A stretch of DNA of 64,000 bases from Utricularia gibba (taxonomy: Eukaryota; Plantae; Magnoliophyta), in NCBI GenBank assembly GCA_002189035.1, contig CM007989.1, positions 7,068,001 to 7,132,000 of the forward strand, read 5' to 3'. Of the stretch, positions 4,530-40,240 are shown piece by piece. Within the stretch, counting starts at the first letter, position 1, and every line of letters starts with the position of its first letter. Below the pieces are notes generated by a model. That model was not told where the DNA came from and made no database searches. It saw only the letters and a program-made list of their open reading frames with translations. Both the position numbers and the translations under genes were made by a program.

Positions 4530-5223
4530 GAACAGTTTGACTTGGTCTTCACCTCAACAATTATTATTTGACTCTTACTTATTTTATTTTTTTAAAAAAA
4601 GAGAATAATAGTTTCATTTTCACCTATGTTTTAGTGGTATTAATTTATAATGAGGAAAAAAATATGGGCCTTTTGTAAAGCTCAATACCCATGGGCCGTG
4701 GTGGAGGCTTCCAGCTCGTTACTGCTGGAAACGGAAATGGAATATTCTGGGGTTTCATTCGGCTGGAAACCGCGTTTTTAAGCAAAATCGTTGCTGCGCA
4801 ATTAATGCGACCTCTCGAGTCGAAGGGAACGTTCACCTCTATCCGAAATCGACGCTACCGAGATCTGGTTCCCAGACGATTCCTTGGTATGGATTCTAAA
4901 ATGCTGTCCTTTGAAAGGTTTTCTATTCTGTGCGCGCTTCATTTCTTTTGTCTGTTTCTCCTTGTCCTTGATTTGAGCGGTTTGGGGTTTTTTTTTTTTT
5001 TTTTTGGTTTGGTGGTCGTCGCTGTTGGCGAGTATGAAATGCGAAAATTTGAATTATCGTGTTCTGTAGGGTGGTATGATTTTACATTCCAGATCTTTGT
5101 GCTTGGGGGTGAATCACCTTATTGGTGTAAATTTTACACAGCATGAGAATTTGATTTGTATTTTATGAATGGCGCAGGTATCAATATTAAGTTTTGAAAC
5201 TGTTGTCTTCAATTGTGCGTATC

Positions 5224-7285
5224 ATGAAGTACATGGAATATACCCCACTTGAACGGTATGTATTTAGTTTTGGGAAGTGAGGAAATCTTTATAAGTATTT
5301 GATGTTATTATTATGTCGATAGTTTTGCCACTAATTATTGGTATGTACGTACAGAATAAATGATTTCGTGAGCCATTTAAATCTTGGAGAAAGAACAATT
5401 AGAGGCTGTCTGGAGGCTTATTCTTGTAAGTTTGAGGATTTATAAATGCTTGGACTGGAATCTGTGTTGCAAGTGAAAAGGGGATGCATAAAGTTATTTG
5501 CTGAACTTGCTTCTGTAGGCAAACACACAAGTACGGATAAGAAGCTTTCTCTTAGTTTGGAAAATGAGGTGGGCTCTTCTCTTCTGGGTTTTTTTTTTCG
5601 GCATCCTGAGCATCCTCTATTTCAGTAGTTGTGTTCATCAAGTGAGGAACTTCATGTGGAACACAACGTAAAAGAATGATTTAGGAAATTTTGCATCATT
5701 TTGTCTCCTTTCCGCCATCAGGTTGTAAATGAGGCCAAATTACTTTAGATTCGTTTCTTGAATCTCAGGACGGTTTTATTTCTTTCTAATACTTTGTTTT
5801 ACTATACCACTTATTGAGCATTCTCTTTTTTTTTTCTGTGTTATAGTAGCTTTCATATGTACCGTGAGGTATAATTTTACCAAAATTAATACCTGCCACC
5901 CCCCACCCCATCCCCTCTCTCACAACTATAAGCGGGAGTGGTTCATGCTGGCACTTTTTTGTTACAGATTCTTGATCATCTTGGGAAGTCTTCGGATACT
6001 GACTCCTGTTCACCAGTTGAATATCTACTTAGTAGATCCAGGTATTATAAATATATATAATTTTCCACTGTATTTTGTGACGTGACCATTACCCATCCTT
6101 GATTGGCAGCCGGAAGACTTTGATATACCTTCTTCTAACTCTTCATCATATCTACCCCGAGCACAACTTCAGGTAACCCTGTATCGTATTGAGGTAGAAG
6201 AAAGGATTATGGGTAATGCCTCTATCAGCTTTCTCAGCGATGTGGCATCCCATTATATAGTCCTTTCTTAATGAACTTGGGAGTGTTGTCAGAAGGTTTG
6301 ACAAACAGTTTAGATTACTGTTGCTCTGATAGGAGCTGAGAGTTCAAGTCTCTCCATTTCCCAAATTATGGCCGATTGATATCCTTTCATCACTCATCAT
6401 TTTCTTTGTGGGTTTTGGGTGCTTTTATCAGTATACTTTATGCATGTTTTTTTATATTCTACAACGAATCATCTTCTGGCTTAGCAGTGCAATGAAGGCG
6501 CACATGTATTTTACCGAAGAAACGTGGGATTCCTTCAGGCAGATCTTTGATGCCTATATGTATGAAGCCTGCAGGGTAATTGCTTATGGATCTTCTCCCA
6601 ATATTTGAGTCGTGCTAGTCATGAAACCTCTTGAAGAATGGATCTTCGTGCCTGATTTGTTTATTGTAATGCATTCAATTAAATTCAATGCATATATGCA
6701 TTCATGTTAAACTTGGTAAAGCTTTAAATCACAGGAATGGCTTGAGGAGAATGATGATGGGACCCTGCTCGAAACCTTGTACAAGGCTTTAGATGAGGTA
6801 GTATCGGTTATGAAGGGATTCCGGAAAGGGAAAAAACAGATACTAGGGATCACAGGGGACTTTTGTCTGACACTTGCAGGTTGTGAATGTACCCGAGTGT
6901 GAAATCTACAGTTACAACCCTTCTGTTGAAGATGATCCTTGGTTTGAAAAAGGAGCCATGTAAGCCTAGAAAGCTACTTATCCACGCATCCTATTCCACC
7001 ATTGGCTCCCGCTCCATCAGCTACTAATTTCCATTTTCTGTTCATTGAATCTCACTTTGCAGATGGTCTTACCATTTCTTCTTTTACAATCGAGGTCTCA
7101 AGCGGGTCGTTGCTCTTTGCTTCTGCTGCGTAAGGTAATACCCAATTACTTGTATCAGTTCGATGGCAAGGAAGTGTTCTGGTTCAACCAATTTTCTTGA
7201 CTGCTACAGTAATTTGGTTGGCGAACGCTTCTTAGAGTCTAATCCGGACGACGATGGCGAAATTTTCGTTGATATGGATATATAA
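5224..7285 (+). CDS. MAF1: Repressor of RNA polymerase III transcription MAF1 homolog, multi-exon
   Basis: Spliced exons give MKYMEYTPLER / INDFVSHLNLGERTIRGCLEAYSC / KHTSTDKKLSLSLENE / ILDHLGKSSDTDS / RKTLIYLLLTLHHIYPEHNFS / AMKAHMYFTEETWDSFRQIF / TLYKALDE / ECEIYSYNP / WSYHFFFYNRGLKRV / ...DGEIFVDMDI*, with GT-AG junctions. Confidence 0.93.
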
Positions 7286-8062
7286 TCTAAAGCTGGTAGC
7301 TTGTGAAGTACTTCCAAACCACGTGGCTGAGTGTGTATGTGAATTAATCCCTTGTATATGTATATAATTGTATGTCTATGTGTTTGCATTCCCAGTGGAA
7401 CTGTGCGAGTGCAATAAGAGTTCGAACCTTGAACCGGAGACCTCGGTAAGCAGGATACTGGAGTGTCCGGGTCCGGTTAGCATCATGTAAACAAAACAAA
7501 AAAAAAAAACTTTTAGATCATGAAATGTATCTGCTTGTTGTTACCTACTCAATACCTTGGCCCTTTTTCATTAGAAAAAAATGTGTTTTTTGATGCAAGT
7601 GAACACAAAAGCGAAATGCATTGAAAACTTTTAAAAAAAAAATTGTAGGAATGGCTTATGGAGAAGGATTTTTTTCTTGTGGTAGTGATTTTTTGTTTGC
7701 CATCTTGCAAATCTACTCTGGTTACTGCATGTTGTTCAGGTTGTATGGATAAGTCTTGCAGATGTAGTATTCGATTTGGAAAGAAATTGTGGTAAAATGA
7801 AGAGGCAGACAAAGACGTGAAATGAAATGATGAAATCTTATTACAAGTTCGATCACATTTGTTCTTCCTTCACATGCTAAAAACAAATCCGGATGTTGGC
7901 ATGGTTGTCTACTTGCCTTATGCAGTATGTGAATGTGGAGCCACCCTCGTTATCCATCCTTCTATATATACAAGTAACATGTCCTAAAATCCCATTACCT
8001 GATGAAAGCAGTAATTGCTTCTCATTTTCCTCCCCTACACAAAATAATCTGGCTGAAAAAGA

Positions 8063-10334
8063 ATGGAGGAGGGGTTGTTGTTGAAGGAAAGATTACCCGG
8101 AGACCGAGTAAGATGGGTGGAAGTAGGCGGGGAGATGAAGAGCATTGCGTACTTAGCCGGTCCAATGGTGTCTGTCACTCTTTCTTTCTACTTGTTGCAG
8201 GTTTCATCGCTGATGATGGTTGGCCATTTGGGTGAACTCGCTCTTTCGAGTACTTCTATTGCAGTTTCTCTTTCTGGTGTCACTGGCTTCAGTTTCCTTG
8301 TACGTTCTACTCCTCTATCTTCTGTGATAATTTTTTTCTGAAAGTTTATTTGCGTCATGCTGAAAGGTGTGATAGGGAAATAAATATGTTGGTGTGCACA
8401 AGAGCAGCAAATGGGAATGTGTTGCTTTGTTTATTGGTGACTCTTTTTCACTAAATGTGTATCTACAAGATCTTATTTCAAACAGAATCTGAAAGTGTCT
8501 TCATGCACCATGGCCCAAGTTGGCGTGTGGGTTGGATCCTGACACACTTCTTGGAGCGCTTAGCAGCTTGATGTGATGGTAGTTGTTTGCAGAATGGTGG
8601 GTTTTCATTTTCGGCTGACTTTGTAGGCTATTTTTGTGGTCGCCAAGGGGGTGGGAGTTTGTCTTTGAAGCGTAGATGACTAGTTTTCTTCATTGCATTG
8701 AGTTTCATTCTCACATACTTTTTTTTTGTGAAACAGTTAGGTTTGGCAAGTGGTTTGGAAACCATAAGTGGACAAGCCTTTGGTGCTCAGCAGTACGAAA
8801 AAATCGGAACTCAAACCTTTACCGCAATGTTCTGTCTAATCATTGCCACGATTCCCATCTCCATCCTGTGGTTGTATAGCGTAAACTTCCTAATATTTCT
8901 GGGGCAGGATCCTCTGATTGCTATTGAAGCTGGAAGGTTCTTAACTTGGCTAATACCTTCACTGTTGGGCTATGCATTTCTTCAACCTCTTGTTCGATTC
9001 TACCAGATGCAAAGCTTGATTGTTCCCATGATCATGAGTTCATGCATCACTCTGTGCTTCCATATCCCTGTTTGTTGGGCACTTGTTTTTAATTCAAGAC
9101 TTGGGAACGTTGGTGGTGCAGTTGCGATGGGACTTTCCATATGGTTAAATGTTGGCATTCTTGGTTTGTACCTGAAATACTCCCCATCATGTGCTAAAGC
9201 TCGCTCACCTATTTCACTCAAGATACTCGATGGGGTGAAGGAGTTTTTTGCATTTGCAGTTCCTTCCGCATTAATGATCTGGTAAGAGCAAAACTCCCCC
9301 TCAACTTTGTCTGCTTGTTATTTGTTTAACAAGTTTCCAATACCATTTTTATTCATTCGTGATGTAGCCTCGAGTGGTGGTCCTATGAACTACTGGTTTT
9401 GCTAGCGGCATTGCTACCAAATCCGCAACTAGAAACCTCAGTGCTTGCTGTCTGGTACTTCCATCCCAATTCTATAGTCGTTTTTAAGATGAATATATTA
9501 TTCCATCCATTACTGAATGTACATGAGCTGCTCTTTACAGCCTCAGCACCACCACAACACTGTATTCGATCCCAGAAGGACTAGCTGCTGCTGCAAGGTA
9601 CGATCTCTCTGTTTTTTTTGTCTTCTGAGAGAAAATCCTTTGACCATATAGATTATCCTTATTCATCTGCAGCACGAGGATTTCAAACGCTCTGGGAGCA
9701 GGGGATTCACATCGAGCTCGTGTCACTGTGACGAGTGTAATGCTTTTTGCAGTCGTGGATGGGATTGTTGTTAGCTCCACTCTCTTTGCTACCCGCAAAG
9801 TCTTTGGCTACGTGTTCACCAACGAGAAAGAGGTCGTCCAGTACGTTGCAAGCATGACTCCTCTGGTCTGCTTATCTGTTATCTTTGACAGCATCCAAGG
9901 CACAATTGCAGGTACTTGAGAACTCTCTCTCTTCCTACTGAAAGATGTGAGTTACACTCATGACGTCTGACTTCCTTCTTCATGCATCTCAGGAATCGCA
10001 AGGGGCTCCGGCTGGCAGCACATGGGAGCCTATGTAAACCTAGCAGCTTATTACCTTTTTGGAGTTCCGATAGCAGCTTTGTTGGCGTTCTGGTGGAACC
10101 TGAGAGGAAGAGGTCTGTGGCTTGGAATACTGTGCGGTGTGTCCGTGCAAACGATCATGTACGGAACTATAACCATCTGCACCAACTGGGAGAAACAGGT
10201 CTTGTTTTCTTTCCCTGGATATGGGGCACTTCAATTGGGAACAATGATGCTTATCTCTTTCTGGTTTGGAACAGGTAGCTGAGGCGAGGAAAAGGCAATC
10301 CTCTTGGGCACCATGTGCGGTGAGCGAGGCCTGA
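8063..10334 (+). CDS. MATE efflux family transporter (DETOXIFICATION, DTX1-15-like clade)
   Basis: Exons encode YLAGPMVSVTLSFYLLQVSSLMMVGHLGELALS, GLASGLETISGQAFGAQQY, LEWWSYELLVLL, LPNPQLETSVL, STRISNALGAG, GIARGSGWQHMGAYVNLAAYY and TNWEKQ. Last exon 10275-10334. No frameshift seen. Confidence 0.93.
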
Positions 10335-10638
10335 TGTAGAAGAAATGTAGGAGTTTTTGTTTCTTTCTCTCCTTCAAGTGGGAAATGTGTGCATTAGAGT
10401 TGAGGCTGAGGAGGTGTGTAGTAGTAATCTTGCATTCAGATTTGTACTACACATCATAAACTGCGAAGTGCAGAGTAGCAAACGTCTATAGATTCATAAA
10501 CAACTGACATGCACACAAGTAAAGACAGACACAGTTAACCCAAGCACACTTGATACTGCAACACCAGCAATCCACTCCACACAGAAGAAGAAACACACGA
10601 GCAGCAATCCAATCCCCAAAGATAAGCGTGATTTAAAA

Positions 10639-13600
10639 TCATAAAGCTCCACTCAAGTACCGAAGAATTAGTTCCACGACAATGGGAGCTAATTTGTCGA
10701 AGATTTTATCCCAGTCTGTTTTCTGTTGTAAGAAAAACAATGTGAAAGAGTGTACATATATACTGCACAATGCACTAAATGTGAGCAACAGAAATTGTAG
10801 TTGGTACTAACAGTAGTGTTTCTCTCTCTGAGAGAAAAGGATGTTTTCTGAGTGAAGGCTTTCCATAGTTCCAGACACTGACGAGGTGTCAATAAGACGT
10901 GTTCTTCATCAACCTTCAAGGAAACACGGGATGGAGATTAATCAGCAGCAGGAGGAATGAATGATCATGAAATGTCTTTGCAGCAGAAGTGGTAGTAGCG
11001 CTCACCCCCTTCCAATTTTCTAAGCTGTTAAGTTGTTCTCCATTCGAAGGATCTCCAAGAAGGCTGCTCTTCAAAACATTCTCGAATGCATTGGAAACAC
11101 TCGCATCCAATCGCATCACCGCCAGAACCGAGAGCAGTTTCACGCACTATTGATAGACAGTAGCGAGGAAAATGTCAATATAGAAGGAAAAAAGGGAAGA
11201 CAAGTGGTTCAAAAAGAGTTGACAAGCACATACCTCCGAGCGGGATTCCTTGGTGAGTCGATCAATGTCATCTTTAGATAAACTGGATAAATCACGATCC
11301 TTGAAAAACACATCGTAAAACCTGTGGGGTTCAAACCAATCAATATGATGGATGATGCAGCAGTGGGGTTCAAACTTCGATTATTCTCACCTCAGCACCA
11401 TACGATTCAAAGCATTTTCCGATTCTACTCTTGCAGATTCTTTTACCAGGCTTTCACCGAAGTCTTTCAGAAATGACACATTTAATTCCACCATGCTTGC
11501 ATCCACTTTGAAACCAGAGAGGGCATGACGGTACTTCTGAATTACACTTTCACTCTGAGCTGCAGAGTATTCCCTTATTTTCTTCCATGTATCTCCTTCA
11601 CTTTCTAGTAGCAAAGTCCTCGGGTAGTCACCTAGCGCGTCTTTCATTATCTCCTACCGAAGTTTGGAATTATTTAGAGGGCTAGCAAATGGACATGAAT
11701 TGACAACATCATTAGTACCTCATGTTCTTTCAAAATTGCCGGCAGTTGGGAACTTCTAAGTCCAACAATATGTTCATCGATGTCATTCTTGAGCTGATTC
11801 CTGATAGCATATGAGTTCCAGATTGCTTGCTCTGGCTTGGCATCTATGAACAGAAACTTTATATGATTTGCATGCCCCAACACTCACAATATTTTTGCTC
11901 TGTTGACAGAAATGCAGTAGGAGATCAGAGACAACAGCATGTTTTGGTGGTACCTGCAGATGCTTTATCGAACTGCTTGAGTGCTCTTTCAGTGAAGTCA
12001 TTTGCATCTTTGGTGAATTTTTCACCATCTTTCGAGATGACCAAATCCCTCTTGAATTGACTCCAGAGTTTAGAACGTGTGTGGCCCATCGAGGATGTGT
12101 ACACTTCCCTCACGTTCTTACAGAAACAAAAAAGAACATGCACGTGGTGTTGTCATTACGGGGACGGTGGTGATCAAGTGTGTGTGTGTATATATATAGA
12201 GAAAGCTTGAAGGTACCAGAAGGAGCTCCTCTTCTAACTCCTTTCGTTTCACAGATTTCACATTTTCATCAAAATGAAGGGTGGCTGCATCGAAACTGTC
12301 ACAATTCGTTCATAAGTCGGCTTCTGAAACTGCAACTCACAATAACTTGCACAGTGGATTTTTGCAAAGTGTCATATACTCACCTGGATAAGCATTTTTT
12401 AATAAGTTTTCCCAATGTGTCTCCCAGTTTATCCACCGATTCTCTGTCGGCCTTCTTTTTCAGTTCGCACCATTCCTGAGAGCAAGTTAACAAGGACAAA
12501 AATGAGTGGCGACAGGTATTTGAATGACCATATCTTATTTGATACTTTAGTATATAGGATTTCATGAGATTTGATTATTATACATCATATTCTGTTGTTG
12601 GCTTCCGGGGTTTCGAAAACTTAATATTTGAGAAATCAAATAAGAAGTGGAAGGGTGAAACCAACACTCTCAAATTGAAATTTGAGAAATCAAATAGGAG
12701 AGGAAGACTTTCTTTACAACTTTGACCCAAAGAGCATAGTAAAAAGCATTCATGAGGATCATGGTCAGTACCTCATTTTCACGGAATGACTTTAGCTCCG
12801 CATTACGAATCTCATCACACCTATGTTTGGCAAGAGTAAACTAGCGGAGAAACAAGAGTAAATGCTCCTTTTTGGGAAAAGAAAGAAAGAAAGAAAGAAA
12901 GACACTGGAGAATAATACCTTGTGGGAGGGGATGTCAATGTCCTTGTTCGCTTGAATCCCTTCCCATATGGTTTCCAAGCTTTCTGCCAACGCTGATGCA
13001 GGAACTGCATCTCCATTATCACCCACTGTCTCAGGACCACAGATCAATTCTCTTAGTTGGGACACCTACGGTAAACAAACAAGCACATGTGGAATATAAC
13101 ATTAGAAGCAAACTCTACGTTTAATGACCATGTACCTCGTGAATGAACTTTTCTGTAGCATATTCGTAGCTTGATAGTGCCACAACTTTAACCTGAAATA
13201 GAAGACTAAATTTAAACCAGCATATGAACCATATCTAATTAAGTGTACAACAACTATCTTACATTGAAAAACTGGTTTATTTCAGATCGTGTCTCATATG
13301 TTTTTATTGGGATGGAATTCCATATCTGCACAAGTTGTTGATTAGCATAACTGAAACCCTAATGCAATGTCATCAACTGTACCTTAAGATTGTGGAGTTG
13401 ACAAAAAGTAGAGTTATCTTGCGTGGATTGTAGAGATTCCTCATAACCTATTATTTATCATAGTGAAAAAAATGAAGTGAGGTTTTCTTTTTGAATTACT
13501 CATTATGTGAACCGGATCAATACCTCGAATACAACTTTTAAGAGGGAATTCATGGAAGCCTTTTCCCGTCCGATCTCGTTACACTATCTTCACAAACAAG

Positions 13601-14405
13601 AATGTTATATCATTTGGGATCGAATGTCAATAACTCTAAAATATATGTAGAAAGGCATACATGTTGATCAAGACCACATCTGCGACCGCGAGAGCGAAGA
13701 GGGCGGTTTGCTTCTCGAACTTGGTGTCATCCTTTCAAGAAGAGATGAATGACAAAATGATGTCAACCAGCATTTTTTCATTTAGGGGATAAATCGGATA
13801 CCTCTCCGCGTTCACTCCCATCGGAGCCTTCGATATCCATGACAAGTGTGCCAGGAGTGAACTCCTTGTTGTATCCTAACCATATGCCATTGGTCGTCTT
13901 GGACCTGATAAGCACTTTGTTTACTCCGTATGTCATTTGGGTTAGTAATATAATGTAATGTAATGAGAAGAAGGTTCTTGCCTCCCCTCCATCGCATCCA
14001 TTTCTTGGAAATTTGTATGGAACAGGTGATTCAACAGTGTGCTCTTCCCTGCAACACAAATGTTGCTGGTGACCGCCAAACAGACAGAGCGTAAAAAGCT
14101 TGCTACACAGGTAACGTACCACTACTTTGGGGACCTATGATCGCAACGATCTTATAGGAAACACCAAACTGCGCCAGGTTAATTTGCTTGCAGAGATTCT
14201 CAAAAGCAGCGTTCTCGTAAGCACCATCCTTATCTACAAGTTGAATCAATTCAGAACTATCCGAGCGTGAGGAGTTACCATGTGCAGAGCTCGACACAGC
14301 GCCAGCAATACATGGATCTGCACCCAAAAAAAAGGTGGGAAACACGTAATACCAAAACTCTAAAGCCCCTACGAGGAACAGATAAAAAGGTGATCACTTA
14401 CCCAT
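10639..14405 (-). pseudogene. RHD3/Sey1 (atlastin-type) GTPase-like copy A, disrupted
   Basis: Exon pattern is RHD3-like: micro-exon ATGG at 14405-14402, P-loop GPQSSGKST, TLVMDIEGSDGSERGE, DDTKFEKQTALFALAVADVVLIN, and helical exons down to WKAFTQKT. Lesions: TGG>TAG at 13586-13584, a deletion removing the IRD motif near 13400, and the terminal-exon acceptor changed to GGGG near 10615. The end coordinate is the read-through stop TGA. Confidence 0.85.
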
Positions 14406-14495
14406 TGGCGAGAATGAAGATCTACAGAAGCTCAACTCAAAGTCCAGGTACAAAATGACTTCGTGATTGCTCCTCTAAATAATGCTAATTTTGGA

Positions 14496-14517
14496 GTGTG
14501 TGTGTGTGTGTGTGTGT
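14496..14517. repeat. (GT)11 microsatellite upstream of RHD3-like copy A
   Basis: Direct reading of gtgtgtgtgtgtgtgtgtgtgt. Confidence 0.9.
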
Positions 14518-14561
14518 AAACGAAGAAAAATTTTGGTACATGATTTGTCAATAACCAAACC

Positions 14562-16395
14562 TTGACCTTCACTCGGTTTACATAGTCTAGAACTATCCTA
14601 TGCACGAAGCCGCCGTGACCGACATTGACTTTATTTGATAAATAGTCATCCTTTTACCTAAATTGAAAATTTTCATCCTCACAAAAATTTTTAAAAAATG
14701 GTCATATTTAATATTTTATTTTAAATTAATTAAATGCATTGAATGTGAAATATACTTATATTTCTATGTATTTAAGATATTTTATATTTTTTTTATTTAT
14801 GCAGTATAATATTCATAATTATTGTTTTATTAATTTTTTAAGAAATAACGATAAACATTATATTATTTATGTTTAGATCATATAATATTAACAAATAATC
14901 TAATAAAATAAAATATGTTGTATTATTTGATTTAAAAAATACAAAATAAATATCTATACAAATATTTTTTAATTATTATAAATTCATAATAAATCAATAT
15001 TAAAAAATATGTAAATATGCAATTTTTTTTTAATTTGCTATGTAGCACATGAAAAAATAGACGACAAGCGTGAAAAAAAAATCAAACATATCTTGATTAG
15101 CAAAATTCACCTAGAATAAAAATTTCAGAATAAATTATATGTTACAATGATGAGGGTAGTCATTAATAGGACAGTTGAGGACCACGTCCAGGACGGCTGC
15201 AAATCACGTCGTTGACCTTGACCTTAACTCTGGTTTACCATATTCTAGAACCATCACGTGTACGACATAGAAAAAAATCTTGTGGATGTGGCTACAAATT
15301 ATTATCGGTTTTTGATGAACTGATTCTGATGAAATTGATCTAACCCTTCGAAAAAGAAAAAATCACATAGAGTGATTAACGGGAAGATGAAAATAGTGAA
15401 TCTAAAATTATTATTATTATCATTGTTGTTATTATTGTTATTATTATTATTATTATTGTTTTATAGTTTCAAATAATTAATATTTAGTTATTAATTGATA
15501 ATTGACACCTAAGAAATAGATGTTATTAATGTTTAAACATGTAAATAAGTACCAAGAGTGGAGTTATTCCAATAGAGTTGTCCCTTGTCGTCACTCCTTT
15601 TCCCTTGTCCTGTTTAAAATAATTTTTAAAACTAAGTCAATTGGCTCATTGAATAATTGTATAGATTATTAATCATCGAATTTAAACATACATTTAAAAT
15701 TTACCAAATAGAGAAATTCTAATTTTAATGAATTTTGATAACTAATTTTATGTCAATTATATTTGTATTTTTTATAATTATATTATATTGATTTTATATC
15801 AATTTGATATTTTTGGAATAAAAATATATTTTATAATTTTTCAAAATTATTTCAATCTAAATTAAAAAAAAAAAATAGATTGGTATTGATGAATATATTT
15901 TTAAAGGGAATATATTTCTTATTGACTTACATTTTAATGTTTTTTTATTTTCATTCATGGAAAAAAAATAAAAATCTTGACACGCTGTTATTAGTGAGTA
16001 CATATTATATCACTCTTCTAAAAAGTTGGCTACACAGTTGACGTACATTTTAATCGTTGGCACCGCATTCCTTGACTCCTTTTCCCACAACTTCGAATTT
16101 TCTTTTTGTGTGTGGTTCAAGAGGAAAGCCGCCATGGACCCACGTTACGACTCATTCCCTAAATATGATTTTTTATTTTAATTACTATTCACAAATTTTA
16201 TTTTTCTCTTTTGTGGTTATCTTATAGTTTCAAATAAATAATATTTAGTTGAAAGTAGTACAGTATTAGAAAATGATAATCCGTGAACTTGAAAATATAA
16301 ATTGCTGTCCAAATTCGAGAAAATAATTTATTAAACAATTTGTTCGGGGGAAGACCTGATTATTAAGTATAAAATAATTTTCAAAACTAAGTCAA
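14562..16395. promoter_or_regulatory. W-box (TTGACY) cluster upstream of RHD3-like copy A
   Basis: TTGACC/T at 14562, 14625, 15212, 15218, 15922 and 16072, plus reverse-strand AGTCAA at 15635 and 16390. Confidence 0.5.
15408..15460. repeat. (TTA/TTG)n trinucleotide microsatellite
   Basis: ttattattattatcattgttgttattattgttattattattattattattgtt. Confidence 0.8.
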
Positions 16396-16560
16396 CTGGA
16401 TCAGAGAATAATTTTATAGACAAGTAATTAAAATCTCAAAACGAATTGTATATACGTATAAGCAAATTGGATCATTGAATTTAAACAAAAAATTAAATTT
16501 TATCACGTAGTGGTATTATAATTTTAATGAATTTCATACTAAATGATATAACACATATTT
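15455..16560. repeat. Internally duplicated intergenic modules, also shared with the copy B promoter (about 20700-20900)
   Basis: The block ttatagtttcaaa(t/c)aa..aatatttagtt occurs at about 15462, 16223 and 20828. The block aaaactaagtcaa...gaataatt...gaatttaaaca occurs at about 15628 and 16383. The block gtgtgtggtt...ggaa..gccgccatgga occurs at about 16108 and 20737. Confidence 0.75.
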
Positions 16561-16797
16561 TATAATCGATTTTGATTAGGAAAGACAATTTCTTCGTTGT
16601 TCCTGATTTTGCATTCTCTTCCATCGTCTTCTTCTACAAAATTTTATCTTCCTATTTACCAGAACTTAAGGTTTGCCCCCCCTACTTTCCTGCAGACTTT
16701 CTTTTCTCATTCTCTACCCTTTAAGGGCAGCTTACGTGCTCCAAAAAGAGTATGAGTCACTTGCACTCCAATTCCTTCATTAATGCTTTCCTTGAGA

Positions 16798-19700
16798 TCA
16801 TAAGTATAGCTGGTAATAATGTGTCCTGATTCTTGCAAATTGTTTCTTTCTGTAAGGTGTAAAAATTCTCCCAAGCACACTTGATACAACAACATGAGCA
16901 ATCCACTCCACACAGAAGAGCTGCACACGTGCAGCAATCCAATCTGTAAAGACAAGCGTGATTTAAAATGAATCACCTATACCTATACCAATTCCGAAGA
17001 ACAGAAGAACTGCTTTGATGACAAGGGGACCCATTAGAAATATTTTCTTGAAGATTTTACCCGCGCCTGATTTCTGTTGGAAGAAAAACAATGTGAAACA
17101 GATCATATATGTATTGTAGGATGTACTAAAGGAGAAGATAAATTGTAGTTAGGACAGGGAGTAGTAGTGGTTGCCTGTCTAAGAGAAAAGGATGTCTTCT
17201 CAATGAACGCCTTCCATAGTTGCAGACACTGACGAGGTGTCAATAAGACGTGCTCTGCAGCAACCTTCAAAGGAAACACAGGATGGAGATTAATGAGCAG
17301 CAGGAGGAATGACTGCTTGCAAAGTGTCTCTGCAGCACAAGTGGCAGTAGCACTCACCCCCGACCAATTTTCTAAGCTGTCAAGTTGTTCTCCATTTGAA
17401 TAAGATCTAAGAAGACTGTTGTACAAAACTTCCACAAATGAACTGGAAACCCTCTCATCCAATCGGATCACCGCCAGAACCGAGAGTAGTTTCAAGCACT
17501 ATTTGCAGACAGTGAAAAGGAAAATCTCAATATAGAAGGGCAAAAGTGAAGGGGCAGGTGGTTCAAAACGACTTGCAAGCACATACCTCCAAGCGGGATT
17601 CATTGGCGAGCTGATTGATGTCATCTTTAGATAACTTGGACATATCACGATCCTTGGAAAACTCGTCGAAAAACCTGTGGGGTTCAAGCAAATCAATAGG
17701 ATGAATGATGCAGCGGTGGTTTAAGAAACATAGTTGAGATCCATTATTCTCACCTCTCCACCATATGATTCAAAGCATTTTCCGATTCTACTCTTGCATG
17801 TTCTTTTACCAGGCCTTCACCGAAGTCTTTCAGAAGCTTCACATTTAAGCCCAGCGTACTTTGATCCACCTTGTAACGAGAGAGGGCAAGACAGTATTCC
17901 TTAGTTACATCTCCGATCTTGTTTTCAGAGTATTCCCTTATTTGCTCCCATGCATCTCCTGCACTTTCTAGTAGCAAAGACTTCACATGGTCACCTAGCG
18001 CTTTTGTCATTTTCTCCTACACAAGTTTTGCATTCTTTAGAGTGCTAGCAATGGAATATATATATATGTATATTGACAATAGCATGCGTACCTTATATTC
18101 TTTCAAAATCCCAGGCAGTAGGGAATTTTGAAGATGAACAACACGATTATCGATGCCATTCTTGAGTTGATTCCTGATAGCAAGTGAGTTCCAGATTGCT
18201 TGCTGTGGTGTGGCATCTGTACAAAAGAAAGTTTATATATATTGTGTGACCCAGAACTAGCCAACTGTTTCTCTATTAACAGAAATGCAGTAGGAGATCA
18301 GACACAAGAATACCTGTAGATGCTTTATCCAGCTGCTTGAGTGCGCTTTCAGTCAAGTCATCTGCATCTTTAGCAAAATTTGCACTATATTTCAAGTTGA
18401 CCGCATCCTTCTTGAATCGATTCCATATTTTATAACGTGTGTGAACCATCGAGGATGCGTACACCTCCCTTGCGCTCTTACAAAAAAAGAGAAAGAATAT
18501 GCAGGGGTTGTGTGTGTATATGTAGAGGAAACTTCAAAGTACCTCAAGCAGCTGCTCTTCTAACTCCCTTTGTTTCACGGATCTCACATTTTCATCGAAA
18601 TGAAGGGTGGCCTCATTGAACCTATCACAATTCGTTCATAAGTCAGTATAATTTTCACAATTGATTTTTCCCAAGTGTCATATACTCACCTGGATAAACA
18701 TTCGTTAATGAAATCTCCCAAATTGGCCCCTAGTCCATCCACTGACCTTCTCTGGGCCTCCTTTCTCAGTTCGTCCCATTTCTGAGCGCAAGTTGACAGG
18801 GACAAATGAGTGGCAACAAGTATTTGGATGGCAACCTTTTGGCTAGTCCTGAGTAGTTTTATGTTTGTAAAAAGCATTCATGGGGATCATGGCCAGTACC
18901 TCATTTTCAAGGAATGGCTTCAGCTTCTTAGCACGAATCTCATCACACTTATGAGCGGCAAGAGTAAACTAGCGGAGAAACAAGAGTAAATTCTCCTTTT
19001 TGGAAAGAAAACGACAATGGAGAATACCTTGTGGGAGGGGACGTCAATGTCCTTGTTTTCTTTAATCTCTTCCCATATGCGTTTAAAGCTTTCTGGCATG
19101 TGTGAAGCAGGAACTTCATCCCCCTTTTTACTCATTGTCTCAGGACCACAGATCTGTTCTCTTAGTTGGGACACCTACATCAAACATGCTCCCGTGGCAT
19201 ACGACATTAGAAGCAAATCTCACGTTTGATGATCACCATTTACCTCGCGAATGAAGTCATTTCTAGCGTATCTGTAGTGTGATAGCCACAACTTCAACCT
19301 GAAATAGAAGACAAAATTTAAACCAACATATGATACCCAATCTAATTAACTATACAACAAGTATCATACATTGAAAAACTGACTTATGTCATATTTTCTT
19401 GTCTCTGATGATTTCATTGGAATGGAGTTCCATATCTGCACAAGTTGTTGATCAGGATAACTGAAATCCTTATTTAATGTTATCAACTGTACCTCACGAA
19501 TAGTACTTCTTAATTTTAAATCCAACTGAGGGAGAGGAGTCTGCACACAATGAAACCATTAGAAATTATATTTGGTGATTTTCAAAACAAACACAAGGAG
19601 TCAAATAAAGAATCTTACTTCACTCTTATCACGGATGACAAAAAGTAGAGTGATTTTACGTGGGTTGTAGAGCTTACTCATAGCCTATTATTCATCACAG

Positions 19701-20483
19701 TAGAAAAAAAAAGTGAGATTCTTTTGAGTTTGATTATGTGAAAAGTATTAATACCTCGAATACAATCTTTAAGAGAGATTTCATGGAAGCCTTTTCACGT
19801 CCGACCTCATGACACCATCTTCAAAAGCAAGAGAGAAAGAGAAAAACAAGAATGTTATACAAGTCTACAACATTTGTGATCGAATGTTATAAGCAAGGGG
19901 AATAATAACCACTAACTCCTATATCCCTCATCTTTGAAGTGCTGAAATAATCTATGTAAGAATGCATACATGTTGATCAAGACCACATCTTCAATGTCCA
20001 TGACAAGTGTGCAATGAGTAGACTCCTCGCTGTATCCTAACCATATGCCTTTGGTTGTCTGGGACCTGATAAGTACCTGTTTACTCTGTGTATCATTTAG
20101 GTTAATGTAATGAGAAGAAGGTTCTTGCCTTCCGTCCACTGCATTCATTTCTTGGAAATTTGTATGGAAGAGGTGATTCAGCAGCGTGCTCTTCCCTGCA
20201 GCCCAAATGTTGCTGGTGACCGCCAAACAGACAGAGAGTAAAGAATTTGCTGCACAGGTGACGTACCACTACTCTGGGGGCCTATGATCGCAATGATCTT
20301 ATAGGAAACACCAACCCGCGCCAGGTTAACTTGGTCGCAGAGATTCTCAAAAGCAGCGTCCTCATAAGCACCATATTTATCAGCAAGTTGAATCGAATAA
20401 GAAGCATCCGAGCTCGAGAAGATAGCGCGTGCTTTGCTCCACAATGCACGCACTGCCGAGAATGAAGAGGTAAAGAAGCTCAT
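16798..20483 (-). pseudogene. RHD3/Sey1 GTPase-like copy B, disrupted
   Basis: Exon-by-exon paralog of copy A: [54 protein letters not shown] and on. Lesions: in-frame 148-bp deletion fusing MDIE to DVVLIN at 19989/19990, and a 2-nt deletion near 19285 giving TAG at 19265-19263. The original ATG became GTG; an upstream in-frame ATG lies at 20483. Confidence 0.85.
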
Positions 20484-20698
20484 CTCCAAGTTTGCAACTC
20501 AAACTCCACCTACAAAACGACTTAATGATCTGTCGTATATATACATACAATAATTTAGGTGTATGTGTCAAAGAAAACGAAGAATAGCTTTTTTTATGTA
20601 ATAAAATAGGTTATGCAAAGTTTTACATTAATGATCATGAGCTAATACATTAATGTCGCAGTTGCGTGTCGCGTCCAATACAGTTGTCCCTTTCTCGG

Positions 20699-20710: not shown

Positions 20711-22199
20711 TGCGTCATTTCTACCTTCTTTTCAAGTGTGTGGTTACAGGAAGCCGCCATGGATCCACATTCCGCCTCGCATTCTGAATATGTTTTTTTA
20801 TTCGTTTTTATCTTTTGTTGATATTTTATAGTTTCAAACAAATAATATTTAGTTGTCAATAATGATTGAATGTAATAAAATATTAGAAAACGGTAATCTA
20901 AAAATGTGAAAAATAGCATGGGGATAGTTAGATAAGGATGATTGAACGGTGCATTTTTTATGTTTTTATTACAAAAAATAAAGTGATCAATTTAATATCT
21001 ATACCCAAAACTGTGATCAGATTGTGATTGAACCACAATTTGGTCAGATTCATTTTTTTATACTTTAGAGATGTTTGAATTTAATTTAATTTCTATTTCA
21101 AAAACAATTTAATCATGAGCTTTTAAGCACTTGTGTGGATTTTACATTCCATGAATATGTAAAAATTCACAAAGTGGAGTGCATATATTCATGATTTGAA
21201 AAATTATGAGTACGTTGAATTAGTTTCCATTTATAATATTTAATTTATATTATATTATTTTTTAAAAAAATACTAAAATCAAGTAATTTTATTAACAAAC
21301 TAATGGAAACTTGAAAGATTGTCAAAATTATTAGAAAAATACAAAATCAAATAAAACAAAAAAGCATAAAGACACTAGAAATTAAAGTTCAAACTAAATA
21401 AATTAAATTATTTATCATCACTACATAATAATAAGCATTTCAGTTTAATACTGTGTTCTTAGAATCCAAGACAAGTTACCTGTCAAATTACAACCTTTAA
21501 ATGAGGAAAACGTCTCAGTTAAATTCAAGTACTTTGAGATAGCTTATTTTATTTGATGTTTTGACTTATTGTTTAGAGTTTATTCGTTGCTTTATTATAT
21601 TTAGAATTATAAAAAAATATTAGATGGCACTTATATTTATTAGAATTAAATAATCATTTAAGCTAAAATATAGAACACATAAAGAAACAATTAACAGACA
21701 TGTTTTGAGAGCATGTGTTCAGAATAAGAATTTCATATATTTGGTTATTAGATGAGACAATTTTACTATAGATGCTCATATTCTAAAAAATGCTTTGTCT
21801 CGACCAAATGGTCTACAAGTTCTTAAAGTCAAGTTTTTTTTTTTGTTTTATCTTGCTATATACTAATCAAAATAACTAATCTACAAATGTGGATATGCTA
21901 AGTTAATATTACGTTTGATATTAATATATTAGTATGTTTAAGTATAATATAATTAAATATGTATATACTTAATTGTAGATAACGTTTGATATGTAAAAAT
22001 ATAAATTTAAGTATATGAGTGCTATACATATAAGTAGTCATCTCCTCTATTTGTATATATTATCTATATACTCAAAAAAATAAGTATATCAATAATATAA
22101 TTATACAAGTTTAGTATATATATACTAATCAATCAAACAACGATATATATCTAAACTTAGATATAAATATTCTATACTATCTTATCAAACATCCCATTA

Positions 22200-30332: not shown

Positions 30333-30623
30333 TCATCGTTCATCGTTGGAAGCTGGACCACCGGAGCGGAATCTTGCAGTGACGTCAATGCCTGAAACTG
30401 CTGTAGTTTGTGCAACCGGGTCGGGTCAGAAAAGTGGTGATGAGAGTTTGCTTTGAAAGAAATGAAAATAAAAAAAAGAAAGAAATTGAAAAGCTGTGAG
30501 GCAAAATAAAATAAATGAATTATTTAATGGGTAGTATAAAAGAAATGATTTTCACAGCTGGACTATAATCTGCACGCATCCACCGGCGACTCGTTTTTCA
30601 CTCTTTTGGAAGTCTCTTCTGCC

Positions 30624-32782
30624 ATGGAGGCTACGCCGGCGCCGGCGATGCCGCAATCGGTGGCTGCGCCCATCGTCAACGCTGCCGTCACCGCTGGGGT
30701 GTACGCGGAGTCGATCGATTCCTCGCCGCGTTCTCGCCACACGGAGCAATTGGAAGCCGATCCTGTGTCGGCTGTGCCGCAGAAACTCCGGTTGATGTGC
30801 AGCTACGGAGGACACATAGTTCCTCGACCACATGATAAAACCCTCTGCTACGTGGGCGGCGACACGCGAATTATTGTAATTGACCGCCACACTTCGCTTT
30901 CGGACCTCCACAATCGTCTCTCTAAAACCCTCCTCCATAACCAATCCTTTTTGCTGAAATACCAACTGCCGAACGAGGACCTGGATTCTCTGATTTCTGT
31001 GGCGACGGATGAAGATCTCGAGAATATGGTGGAGGAGTACGACCGCCTTAGTAATGGCGGGGGGTCTCTGAAACAGGGGCGTCTTCGTCTCTTCTTGTTT
31101 CCGAAGTCGCAGTCAAATATTGAACATCTTCTTGTTGAAACTGGGTCCGCAAAGTCGGAGGACTGGTTCTTCAACGCCTTGAATGGAAAGGCAAGTACCG
31201 TATCTGGTGGCTGCGCAAGTGATCGTGGGTTTTCGGAGTCTTCTTCGATTAATAATCTTCTTGGTTTGGATGAAGATCCAGTTGCTAAAGGTGGGATCGG
31301 AGGAAAAGATGGTGAAGCTCAAGCAGAGGGGTCAAAAGTCTCCGGAACTGGATCGGGAAATAGCGCTGTTAATCATGATGTACACTCTATTCCGGGTTCT
31401 CCAATGCTCGACACCACATCGTCTTTTGGATCTACTAACAGTTCCCCGTCAATGGCAAATTTGCCGCGTATAAAAGTACATGTTGAGGAGAATCCGAAGG
31501 TGGGCATTATAGGACTTGAGGATCAGTTTCAGCAGATGCATGTTATTGAAGGTGGAAATGCTAATTTACCGCTGTCTCATAAACAAGAAGAATTGGGGGG
31601 TTTGTGGCACCGGTGGCGGTTGCCCCTGGTTTGCCGGTAGTTGTCGGTGGAGAATATGCCGCTGGCAGGGTGTTATCCGATGATGAGAGATCGGAACATG
31701 GTGGTCATACAAGAGTTCAACAAGTTCAGGTTCAAATTCAAGGTCATTCTCATTTGCCACAGCTTCCGGTTGCCCAAATTCCGCAGAAATCATCTGGTGT
31801 GACTGATTTGGCCTCACCTGATTCAGTATCAAGGTGCAGAATTGAAACCTCAGATAAGAATTCTCCATTTTGTCTCCTATTAATATGATTTTAACTGTTT
31901 GTATTCATGACTTATTGATGTAGTGAGGGAAGCGCCAGAAACACATTGTCTAAGCAGATGCAAGTCGTGTATCAAGAACCTATTGCACAAATACCATCTG
32001 GAAACAGCAGGGTCAGCCCTAGCCAGGCTGATATCAAGAATGGTGAGCCTGATAGCATCAAGTATCAAGTGCAACCACATGTTCAGGAACATGGGTATAT
32101 ATTATCCGGCCAGTTTGACCAAAACCATCATACCTTGCATCGTCCACAACAGTTTGTTCATGCTGGAAACCAGTACATACCTGCTGGAGCGGTACCGATT
32201 GCATCTTACTACCCTGTTTATGCACACCAGCAGCAGCAGAACTTACACCAACATCTGATTGACCAGCCATACCCATTCTACTTCATGCCGGCTCGACCTG
32301 CTCAAGCATACAGCTTGCAACCACAGCAGCCAGCTTATAATGAGCTGCCACATTCAGCTCCTTCTAGCCGCCCCCAAACGCCTCCTCCTGCTGGTGCAGC
32401 ACATCAGGTAGCCTATACTTCCACAATTACCGGTCCTTCCTCCAAACCTGAACTTACTACTGGGGTGTATAGAACTGCTGCTGGGGTAGCTCAGCAATTG
32501 GTGCAGCTTCCCTCAGGCCAGCATCAAACGCAGTATGTGGGTTTCAGCCAAATTTCTCATCCTTCTCAGTCAATTAACCCCATACCCGGAGTCAATGCTC
32601 CTTTTACCTATGAGTTTGCTGATCCTTCACGCCCCCAAATGTATTACAGCCAGCCTCTGCCTCCTCAATCAGCTGCCCATTACCAAACATTGACACCCGC
32701 TACGGCTGCAGTGATACCGAATGCCTCTGCTCAGCTCCCCGTAGAGACTGTGAAGCATCCGGTCAAGACACCGCAACCATGA
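30624..32782 (+). CDS. PB1 (octicosapeptide/Phox/Bem1p) domain protein with Pro/Gln-rich tail (apparent 1-nt frameshift at 31595-31600)
   Basis: DSIDSSPRSR, KLRLMCSYGGHIVPRPHDKTLCYVGGDTRI, LKYQLPNEDLDSLISVATDEDLENMVEEYDR and RVLSDDERSE. One intron at about 31833-31923. The last exon ends at 32782. Confidence 0.9.
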
Positions 32783-39004: not shown

Positions 39005-40240
39005 CTCCCAGAAACAGAGAGAAACAACAGCCCAAAGCAACAGAACCGAGCTTGGGTTTATTCGCTTCCTCCAGAAGCCTAACAAAAAGCCAAGCAGATA
39101 GGGGAGAAACAAAAGCCTGCAAATGAAAATGGAAAATGGGGGGTAGTTTGCAGGCTAGAGAGAGAGAGTGACTATGAACAGACGTAAGTGTGAAAGCCTT
39201 GACAGCCTGGGAAAGAAGGCGTTGCTTTCAAATCAGAAGGACCAGGCAAACACACCTCTGAGAGAACACTATCAATTCTGTGGGGGAGCAGAAAGCTTCA
39301 TGACGAAAATAAAAACGAAACGAAACTACCCACTGGACAAAATGTGAAGCTCCTCTTGCTCTCCTACAGAACCAGACAAGGGAATATGTTCTGCTCCGAT
39401 TGTTTCATTAGGAGCCGGACGATTCCCTTCACTCCACTTGCAATCAAAACAAGATTTGGTTCATGAGATTAGAACATAAAGAATTAGTTTTTATATGACT
39501 TTGAGTTAGTAATTAAAAATTTAAAATTAAATAAAAGAATGAGGAGTGTAGATTTAGATAAATTCGACCTTATAATATTAAACAAAAATAATTCAATTTC
39601 AGATTTATGGATATAATTTATAATATTTATATTAAATACTCGTAGACTTTTATTGAGTCGAGTCATGTGAGACCTGAGGGAGCAGCAGATGTCATAAATA
39701 TCTTATAGTAATATTATTATTAATAATATTATATAGGGAATAAATAATTGATTTTATTGATGTGGACCCGGGATGTGGTACTCCCTCTCCCCCCTCCCTT
39801 CAATGGTTTGGGGGTCACCTACTATCATCACTGTGCACCTCTTGTATATACCACCTAATCTTGAAATTAAATATTGATGTATATGATGAGCTATAATAAA
39901 TATAAATTATATTAAAAAAATAAATTTAATTAATTATTAATGATTTATAATATTTTATATATTTAAATTTTCGATATAAGATTATTTGTTCTAATATCAA
40001 ATCTTTAAAATGACTTCCCTAACCATTTAGGTATGCTTGATAGAAGATTTAGATGACTTTAATAAGTTTTTAGTTTTAATAAATCTTGTTTAACTAGAGA
40101 TTTTATACAAAAGTATTTTTCAGAAAAATGATTTTAAATAAAGTTAATAGACAAGTGGTTTTATTTAAAGATATATATTTGATTTTAATTAAATACTACT
40201 TTTAAAAACACTTCCTCAACTGAAATGAAGACTTCCCCTC

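What the first reader, a model, noticed from the sequence alone, without database searches (positions are those of the whole stretch)
10639..20483. Tandem pair of strongly diverged RHD3/Sey1-like GTPases with an immune-gene-like evolutionary signature
Seen: two copies keep the full RHD3 exon structure and alignable introns but differ heavily in protein. In one helical exon (12117-11955 vs 18477-18315) my hand count is 22 of 54 codons changing amino acid, about 23 non-synonymous vs about 7 synonymous changes, so dN/dS is roughly 1. Yet each copy has only one premature stop over about 2.2 kb of CDS, fewer than long neutral decay should leave. Established: canonical RHD3 is a conserved ER-fusion GTPase of the dynamin-like class that also includes animal GBPs. 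Inference: a lineage-specific, rapidly evolving, birth-and-death RHD3-like subfamily, possibly defence-related, that kept its ORF until recently. This is the best candidate for an undescribed system in the window.
Basis: partly seen in the sequence, partly recalled or inferred. Interest (0 to 1): 0.75.

Follow-up and report, generated by a model that had tools for sequence, protein, structure and literature searches.

The report
Fast-evolving, recently broken RHD3-like gene pair
A Lamiales plant carries two side-by-side copies of a very diverged relative of the ER-fusion GTPase RHD3; the copies changed protein sequence at about the neutral rate yet kept their reading frame and splice sites for millions of years, and both are now broken in the GTPase domain.

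Summary
Two minus-strand RHD3/Sey1-like genes (A 10639-14317, B 16963-20483) share about 19 collinear exons, canonical RHD3 intron positions and a conserved GC-AG intron 2. Exons (K=0.218) have diverged as much as introns (K=0.227). Whole-gene dN/dS is 0.9 by NG86 and about 1.25 by ML.

Plain neutral decay is nevertheless rejected:
- About 8 stops per copy are expected since the duplication; 1 and 0 are seen.
- About 22 indels are expected in exons 10-18; none is seen.
- All splice dinucleotides are kept.
- Replacements are more conservative than random mutation.

The damage is greater than "one stop each". A has a nonsense codon, a 127-bp frameshifting deletion (G4 lost) and a lost start codon. 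B has an in-frame 146-bp deletion (G3/switch II lost) and a 2-bp frameshift.

Both copies are only 37-43% identical to canonical RHD3s, which are 71-92% identical to Paulownia RHD3. Both lack the two-TM hairpin and the tail. No close relative turned up in public proteins.

Best reading: a fast-evolving RHD3 derivative without the TM hairpin, functional until recently and now a pseudogene pair. The defence link is untested speculation.

The parts
10639..14317 (-). Copy A of the RHD3-like gene, 19 exons: 14317-14120, 14048-13982, 13904-13802, 13731-13661, 13587-13524, 13447-13383, 13325-13263, 13192-13136, 13065-12919, 12840-12772, 12475-12384, 12295-12217, 12116-11954, 11843-11719, 11653-11391, 11321-11234, 11146-11006, 10913-10776, 10722-10639
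   Evidence: All acceptors are AG and all donors GT, except the GC donor of intron 2. Pfam RHD3_GTPase and Sey1_3HB hit the exon pieces. The copy is collinear with canonical RHD3.
16963..20483 (-). Copy B, 19 exons: 20483-20267, 20195-20129, 20065-19970, 19818-19755, 19684-19619, 19540-19493, 19435-19370, 19298-19244, 19174-19028, 18968-18900, 18781-18690, 18621-18543, 18476-18314, 18216-18092, 18016-17754, 17674-17587, 17498-17358, 17264-17127, 17073-16963
   Evidence: The ATG lies at 20483-20481.
13584..13586 (-). Nonsense codon in copy A exon 5: TAG where B and canonical RHD3 have the Trp of 'INMWC'
   Evidence: Sequence; frame-corrected translation; alignment with canonical RHD3.
13383..13447 (-). 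Copy A fused exon 6/7. A 127-bp deletion relative to B removes the end of exon 6, intron 6 and most of exon 7, with 49 nt of CDS lost. This is a frameshift, and the G4 'RD' region is gone.
14433..14435 (-). TTG in copy A at the position matching B's start ATG. An insertion of about 84 bp and an in-frame stop follow it. A possible ATG plus mini-intron rescue (14405-14402, then 14317) is unverified.
   Evidence: Read by eye.
19970..20065 (-). Copy B fused exon 3/4. A 146-bp deletion removes 78 nt of CDS (26 codons, in frame) plus intron 3. The G3 DxxG motif and switch II are lost.
19244..19298 (-). Copy B exon 9, with a 2-bp deletion (between 19286 and 19285) that creates an in-frame TAG at 19265-19263
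13905..13981 (-). GC-AG intron 2 of copy A (B: 20066-20128). The same GC donor is seen in canonical RHD3 loci L012 and L014.
16963..17073 (-). Terminal exon of B. It encodes one hydrophobic stretch (19-residue Kyte-Doolittle mean 2.24) and then a stop. It stands in place of the canonical TM1, TM2 and tail exons.
10639..10722 (-). Terminal exon of A. It is shortened by in-frame deletions of 9 nt and 18 nt (27 nt in all, as aligned) and has no TM-grade hydrophobic stretch.
14504..16099 (.). AT-rich block of about 1.6 kb (28% GC, microsatellites, internal direct repeats) inserted about 100 bp upstream of copy A's former start codon. B has 157 bp at the same place.

Best explanation
These are two tandem duplicates of one very diverged RHD3/Sey1-type dynamin-like GTPase gene in a Lamiales plant.

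Shown: their common ancestor had a complete RHD3-type GTPase domain. Taken together, the two copies still show G1, G2, G3 and G4. The ancestor also had the long three-helix-bundle region and all canonical intron positions up to the membrane region. It had lost the exons for the two-TM hairpin and the amphipathic tail, and ended instead in one short exon with a single hydrophobic stretch.

Shown: after the duplication (K about 0.23, roughly 8-17 million years) both copies changed amino acids at about the neutral rate. Even so, frameshifts, stops, splice-site losses and radical replacements were filtered out for most of that time.

Shown: both copies now carry disabling lesions in the GTPase half.

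Inferred: both copies are recent pseudogenes of a gene that was functional. The ancestral protein could not have acted as a canonical ER fusogen. It most likely worked as a cytosol-facing GTPase held by a tail anchor that dimerises through its G domain with itself or with RHD3. That would make it a tether, a regulator or a competitor of RHD3.
For: Family identity and collinearity rest. The conserved GC-AG intron 2 is.

Divergence: exon K is 0.218 against intron K 0.227. dN/dS is 0.90 by NG86 and 1.25 by ML overall, 0.6-0.75 in the GTPase part and 1.06-1.7 in the 3HB.

Evidence against neutral decay:
- 7.6-8 stops per copy are expected and 1 and 0 are observed, with single-copy P of 0.0035 and 0.0008.
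- Exons 10-18 (1167 nt) have no indels, against 22.6 expected at the intron rate.
- Exon indels are multiples of three in 7 of 10 cases, against 2 of 24 in introns (Fisher P = 0.0007).
- All 36 splice dinucleotides per copy are kept, against about 7.7 losses expected.
- Replacements are more conservative than random mutation (mean BLOSUM62 0.12 against -0.34, P = 0.0004).

The lesions are documented. The missing TM hairpin and tail are shown.
Against: - There are no transcript data and no intact relative, so past function is inferred only from sequence statistics.
- The intron indel rate may overstate the exon mutation rate, because the introns are AT-rich. At a quarter of that rate, P is still 0.0035.
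- dN only equals the intron rate. The fast change could therefore reflect very weak constraint rather than adaptation.
- B could still give a protein if exon 9 is skipped, since exon 8 ends and exon 10 starts in phase 0. 'Both dead' is thus not proven for B.
- The proposed molecular role has no direct support.
Confidence: 0.6

Rival explanations
1. At least copy B is still functional as a GTPase-dead or N-terminally truncated protein: a three-helix bundle plus a tail anchor. The lesions cluster in the GTPase half because only that half became dispensable, so the gene was re-purposed rather than lost.
For: All four disabling lesions lie in the first 759 of 2178 aligned CDS positions (P about 0.015 if placed at random, a post hoc figure). 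Exons 10-20 are open and free of frameshifting indels in both copies. Skipping B's exon 9 would restore the frame (phases). B keeps a TM-grade hydrophobic end.
Against: The GTPase part shows the lower dN/dS (0.6-0.75 against 1.06-1.7 in the 3HB), the opposite of early release of that domain. A has also lost its start codon, has a 1.6-kb insertion in its promoter-proximal region and has lost the hydrophobic end. There is no transcript evidence.
Confidence: 0.17
2. The lineage was, or is, a pathogen-facing factor under diversifying selection, for example a decoy or competitor of RHD3, which some viruses depend on. That arms race drives the fast protein change and the gene turnover.
For: dN/dS is about 1 or more in the helical region while the ORF is kept. 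The genes are a tandem duplicate that was later lost. Canonical RHD3 matters for virus spread: TSWV cell-to-cell spread is delayed in the rhd3 mutant (PMC4749231).
Against: dN does not exceed the intron rate (0.22-0.25 against 0.227), so positive selection is not shown. Only two sequences exist, so no site or branch test is possible. There are no GBP or NLR domains and no defence genes nearby: the neighbours are a MATE carrier, a ZAR1-like kinase, a PB1 protein and a XIP aquaporin. No other family members were found.
Confidence: 0.15
3. This is plain neutral decay: the gene was already dead before or at the duplication, and the open frames are chance.
For: Exon and intron divergence are equal. 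dN/dS is not different from 1. Both copies carry disabling lesions.
Against: The joint probability of so few stops is about 3e-6 (the product of the two single-copy probabilities). There are no indels in 1167 nt of exons, against about 22 expected. Exon indels are biased to multiples of three (P = 0.0007). All splice sites are kept (P about 2e-4 per copy). Replacements are conservative (P = 0.0004). The 37-43% identity to canonical RHD3 with an intact exon structure also implies a long stem spent with an open frame.
Confidence: 0.04

Closest known systems
Canonical plant RHD3 (ROOT HAIR DEFECTIVE 3; Arabidopsis RHD3/RL1/RL2 family) and its Lamiales orthologues such as Paulownia P0202 and Sesamum P0185
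   Same: Both have the RHD3-type GTPase domain, with '[15 protein letters not shown]' almost unchanged, and the long Sey1-type helical bundle. Exon borders are the same up to residue 680 of the Paulownia RHD3. The GC-AG intron 2 is shared.
   Different: - Identity is only 37-43% overall: 50-55% in the GTPase domain and 32-36% in the 3HB.
- The two TM segments and the C-terminal tail are absent, replaced by a short exon with at most one hydrophobic stretch.
- There is an N-terminal extension of about 21 residues, rich in Ser, Ala and Arg.
- Amino-acid change is about neutral rather than strongly constrained.
- Both copies are broken.
Yeast/Candida Sey1p (PDB 5ca8)
   Same: It belongs to the same Pfam families. 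Exon 10 matches the end of the Sey1p GTPase domain weakly.
   Different: The match is very distant (E = 0.18 for that exon). Sey1p has the TM hairpin and tail and is a proven fusogen (PMC9804665).
Animal GBPs and other immune dynamin-like GTPases
   Same: They also combine a large GTPase with a helical domain, occur as tandem duplicates and evolve fast. This is an analogy only.
   Different: No Pfam GBP or GBP_C hit was found on any exon. The language-model look-alikes to GBP_C are of lead quality only, with low recognition. No homology beyond the shared superfamily was shown.

Membership tests
RHD3/Sey1 family of ER-fusion dynamin-like GTPases | N-terminal RHD3-type GTPase domain (Pfam PF05879) | tested here: met
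   Exon pieces of A hit PF05879 at profile positions 6-30, 26-69, 65-89 and 214-245. Pieces of B hit positions 8-26, 29-56, 89-109 and 214-245. Each piece is below the whole-protein cut-off on its own, but they lie in order along the profile. Identity to Lamiales RHD3 in this domain is 50-55%.
RHD3/Sey1 family of ER-fusion dynamin-like GTPases | Complete set of GTP-binding motifs (G1 P-loop, G2 Thr, G3 DxxG, G4 RD) in one open frame | tested here: not met
   A keeps G1, G2 and G3 but lacks G4 (127-bp deletion) and has a stop in exon 5. B keeps G1, G2 and G4 but lacks G3 and switch II (146-bp deletion) and has a frameshift in exon 9. Taken together, the copies imply that their ancestor had all four motifs.
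RHD3/Sey1 family of ER-fusion dynamin-like GTPases | Long Sey1-type three-helix-bundle region (Pfam PF20428) | tested here: met
   There are weak PF20428 hits on exons 14 and 16 of A and on exon 16 of B. The region aligns collinearly and without gaps to residues 296-645 of canonical RHD3, at 32-36% identity.
RHD3/Sey1 family of ER-fusion dynamin-like GTPases | Two closely spaced transmembrane segments (hairpin), as described in PMC9804665 | tested here: not met
   tblastn with a full Paulownia RHD3 finds nothing for residues beyond about 690 near either copy. The canonical exons 680-712, 712-745 and 745-end have no counterpart. B has one hydrophobic stretch and A has none.
RHD3/Sey1 family of ER-fusion dynamin-like GTPases | Cytosolic C-terminal tail with an amphipathic helix | tested here: not met
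   Both ORFs stop 27-36 codons into the last exon. Nothing aligns to the canonical tail.
RHD3/Sey1 family of ER-fusion dynamin-like GTPases | Canonical plant RHD3 exon-intron structure | tested here: met
   Exon borders fall at Paulownia RHD3 residues 51, 143, 164, 202, 223, 242, 295, 318, 349, 375, 430, 472, 560, 592 and 645. These coincide with HSP borders in canonical loci L003, L012, L013, L014 and L020. The GC donor of intron 2 is shared.
RHD3/Sey1 family of ER-fusion dynamin-like GTPases | GTP-dependent homotypic ER membrane fusion | not testable with these tools
   This needs biochemistry or genetics.
Rapidly evolving immune gene families (GBP-like or birth-and-death clusters) | Positive selection (a class of sites with dN/dS above 1) and several turning-over paralogues | tested here: inconclusive
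   Pairwise omega is 0.9-1.3 overall and 1.06-1.7 in the 3HB. The NG86 bootstrap interval spans 1, and dN equals the intron rate. Only two copies are known and no other members were found.
Rapidly evolving immune gene families (GBP-like or birth-and-death clusters) | Defence-type domains or defence gene neighbourhood | tested here: not met
   No GBP, NB-ARC or TIR hits were found on the exon pieces. The neighbours are a MATE carrier, a ZAR1-like LRR kinase, a PB1-domain gene, a kinesin-like gene and a XIP aquaporin.

The most novel reading that the evidence does not exclude
A and B are the dead local remnants of an undescribed RHD3-derived subfamily in Lamiales, with intact members elsewhere in this genome or in related species. 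Its members would be tail-anchored and unable to fuse membranes. The helical bundle would evolve under diversifying selection because the protein faces pathogens that exploit RHD3, for example as a decoy or as a dominant-negative restriction factor.
Probability: 0.12. Interest if true: 0.8.

Novelty: new variant of a known kind. Interest (0 to 1): 0.45.

Why it matters
RHD3/Sey1/atlastin proteins are described as slowly evolving housekeeping fusogens with a fixed layout: GTPase, helical bundle, TM hairpin and tail. In the papers I searched I found no description of a derivative like this one.

Here a derivative lost the hairpin and tail. It then changed its protein sequence about as fast as introns change, yet was kept open and spliceable for a long time. 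In their helical region the two young copies differ as much as monocot and dicot RHD3 do.

This shows that the RHD3 scaffold can be re-used for something other than fusion. If intact members exist, they would give a handle on regulators or competitors of ER fusion in plants, perhaps linked to pathogens.

In this window, however, both copies are broken, so the immediate value is evolutionary rather than functional.

Tried and rejected
1. Close relatives. phmmer with A's 88-residue exon 16 against 1.84 billion representatives gave three weak hits. P0001 is a metagenome fragment, 35% identical to A and 47% to canonical RHD3, so it is not a clear subfamily member. P0003 is canonical-like. P0002 is a spurious repeat. 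The word search with the A+B+P0001 profile returned only P0001.

2. PDB. No plant RHD3 is held, only Candida Sey1p at E = 0.18.

3. ESM Atlas. Recognition was low and the Sey1_3HB and GBP_C look-alikes are of lead quality only.

4. Phylogenetic origin is unresolved. A+B attach in a core-eudicot polytomy with 57 rows and at the monocot base with 31 rows. The AU test does not reject a clade with Lamiales RHD3 (p = 0.34). Diagnostic-site counts were too few to use. No named RL1 or RL2 sequences were obtained, because the top 120 hits were all RHD3-type.

I then worked from coordinates only.

7. The joined spliced protein models were never sent to a public-database tool, to structure prediction or to fold search. 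They were used only in local scripts, with X at each break.

8. Rfam found nothing in the window.

9. A possible rescue of A's start by an 'ATG G' mini-exon plus an 84-nt intron fits the splice consensus, but it is unverified and I did not rely on it.
Full report
**What is there.** The window is plant DNA from the order Lamiales. A ZAR1-like LRR kinase at 36770-39112 has its best hits, at 70-74% identity, in Paulownia, Phlomoides, Handroanthus and Sesamum, and nothing is near-identical. Earlier notes of this scan call it a compact Lamiales genome as well. It is not human.

Between 10.5 and 20.6 kb lie two minus-strand copies of one gene. blastn aligns 10539-14503 with 16870-20568 at 77-83% identity, across exons and introns alike. 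Exon-sized open frames hit Pfam RHD3_GTPase (PF05879) and Sey1_3HB (PF20428), in order along the profiles, in both copies.

I fixed the exon models by coordinates. Each copy has 19 exons as it now stands, or 20 exon units once the fused exons are counted apart. Every acceptor is AG and every donor GT, except intron 2, which has a GC donor in both copies. The same GC donor is present in canonical RHD3 loci from a grass and from another plant. The exon borders fall at the same residues as in canonical RHD3 genes, up to residue 680 of a Paulownia RHD3.

**Lesions.**

Copy A:
- It has TAG in place of the conserved Trp codon at 13586-13584.
- A 127-bp deletion fuses exons 6 and 7 at 13447-13383. 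It removes 49 nt of CDS, shifts the frame and deletes the 'IRDK' G4 region.
- It has TTG where B has its ATG, followed by an inserted stretch and a stop (read by eye).
- An AT-rich block of about 1.6 kb sits about 100 bp upstream.

Copy B:
- A 146-bp deletion fuses exons 3 and 4 at 20065-19970. It is in frame and removes 26 codons that include the G3 DxxG motif and switch II.
- A 2-bp deletion in exon 9 produces a TAG.

Each copy keeps the motifs that the other lost, so their ancestor had a complete GTPase domain. 'One premature stop each' is an understatement, but apart from these lesions the roughly 700-codon frames are open.

**Divergence.**
- Aligned exons are 81.1% identical (K = 0.218) and aligned introns 80.4% (K = 0.227).
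- Protein identity between A and B is 65%.
- dN/dS over 639 codons is 0.90 by NG86 (bootstrap 0.70-1.18): 0.59 in the GTPase part, 1.06 in the helical bundle and 1.44 in the last two exons.
- Methods that allow for transition bias give 1.25-1.29 overall, 0.75 for the GTPase part and 1.6-1.7 for the bundle.
- That rise comes from a lower dS (0.15-0.17). dN (0.22-0.25) only equals the intron rate, so I do not claim positive selection.
- In the bundle, A and B (64% identity) are as far apart as Paulownia and rice RHD3 (66.5%).

**Not plain decay.** Five separate tests reject neutral evolution since the duplication.
1. Stops. Simulated neutral substitution at the intron rate and transition bias gives 7.6-8 in-frame stops per copy. 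One is observed in A and none in B. The single-copy probabilities are 0.0035 and 0.0008.
2. Indels. Introns carry 24 indel events in 1241 aligned bases. Exons 10-18 (1167 bases) carry none, against 22.6 expected. Even at a quarter of the intron rate, P is 0.0035.
3. Indel phase. Seven of ten exon indels are multiples of three, against two of 24 in introns (Fisher P = 0.0007).
4. Splice sites. All 36 splice dinucleotides per copy are intact, against about 7.7 losses expected. The sites were not chosen freely, since they coincide with canonical borders.
5. Replacements. Single-step amino-acid replacements are more conservative than random mutation would give (mean BLOSUM62 0.12 against -0.34, P = 0.0004; this also holds within the bundle, P = 0.0016).

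The simulations suggest that the neutral phase covers at most roughly a fifth of the time since duplication. With K = 0.227, the duplication is about 8-17 million years old, depending on the assumed rate.

**Relation to known RHD3.** A metatranscriptome contig (L016) gave a 522-residue canonical RHD3 ORF. That ORF retrieved 120 named full-length RHD3 proteins, including eleven from Lamiales.
- A and B are 37-43% identical to all of them. The canonical proteins are 71-92% identical to the Paulownia RHD3 across monocots and dicots.
- Identity to Lamiales RHD3 is 50-55% in the GTPase domain and 32-36% in the bundle.
- In trees, A+B form a fully supported pair on a stem of about 3-5 substitutions per site. 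The attachment point moves with taxon sampling.
- The AU test does not reject a clade with Lamiales RHD3 (p = 0.34).
- The origin, whether recent in Lamiales or an old paralogue, therefore stays open. I could not obtain named RL1 or RL2 sequences.

**Architecture.** The canonical family is defined by a GTPase domain, a long helical bundle, two closely spaced TM segments and a tail with an amphipathic helix (PMC9804665; PMC13189119). A and B have no counterpart of the three canonical exons that encode TM1, TM2 and the tail. Instead there is a short final exon. In B it encodes a single hydrophobic stretch of TM grade. In A it is shortened by in-frame deletions and is not hydrophobic enough. B, and by homology the ancestor, also has an N-terminal extension of about 21 residues, rich in Ser, Ala and Arg, that canonical RHD3 lacks.

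**Relatives.** A full HMMER scan of 1.84 billion representative proteins with exon 16 found nothing closer than 35% identity. The word search with a profile found only the same fragment. That fragment is nearer to canonical RHD3 (47%) than to A or B. There is no further RHD3-like piece in the window. The scan's notes list no other RHD3-like finding in this genome, although those blanks carry little weight.

**Limits of method.** The joined spliced models were used only in local scripts, with X at each break. They were not sent to any public-database search, family scan, structure prediction or fold search. All tool searches were made exon by exon, by reference.

**Verdict.** The evolutionary inference is supported: this was a fast-evolving RHD3-like lineage that kept its ORF until recently. 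The defence label is not supported by anything tested.

The most likely account is a fast-changing RHD3 derivative without the TM hairpin that was functional through the long stem and for most of the time after the tandem duplication. It is now represented here by two pseudogenes, both disabled in the GTPase half. Less likely alternatives are a still-working GTPase-less product, mainly from B, or an arms-race history. Long-dead pseudogenes are effectively excluded.

Noticed in passing
window 13905-13981 and 20066-20128; L012 about 5463, L014 about 1206: Intron 2 of RHD3 genes has a conserved GC-AG donor (AG|GCA...) in both window copies and in canonical loci from other plants. The annotated Paulownia protein P0202 carries an extra 'HADTEHLNLI' exactly at this spot, which looks like an intron read through by the gene predictor.
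   Followed up: partly
window 20403-20483 (minus strand; B exon 1, 5' part): B starts with an extension of about 21 residues that is rich in Ser, Ala and Arg and has no acidic residue over its first 25 positions. Canonical RHD3 lacks it. It looks like an organelle presequence. A keeps a homologous but disrupted version. No targeting predictor was available.
   Followed up: no
window 14504-16099: An AT-rich block of about 1.6 kb (28% GC) with an (ATT)17 microsatellite and internal direct repeats (15612-15735 against 16367-16534) sits between copy A's proximal upstream region and a piece (16100-16251) that is homologous to 20726-20855 upstream of B. It is probably a transposon-like insertion.
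   Followed up: partly
window 17265-17357 (B intron 18) and 10914-11005 (A intron 18): Intron 18 of B is 93 nt long, in frame and free of stops, so exons 18 and 19 read through as one 131-codon ORF. The A intron is 92 nt. Retention of this intron in B would stay in frame.
   Followed up: no
window 10540-10624 and 16870-16954: The roughly 85 bases just downstream of both stop codons look at least as well conserved between A and B as the coding sequence (by eye in the alignment), but they contain a 1-bp indel. This is probably a conserved 3'UTR element.
   Followed up: no
window 4691-10300 (+), 30606-32782 (+), 36767-39112 (-), 52686-53498 (+): The neighbouring genes are a MATE efflux carrier ending about 350 bp from copy A, a PB1-domain gene, a ZAR1-like LRR receptor kinase and a XIP-type aquaporin. 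None is a classical defence gene cluster.
   Followed up: partly
L003-L021 (JGI metagenome contigs): Plant RHD3 genes with full TM and tail exons occur on long metagenome contigs. They are 51-75% identical to Paulownia RHD3 over the HSP-chained rows, with L006 the most divergent at 51%. The source organisms are unknown.
   Followed up: partly
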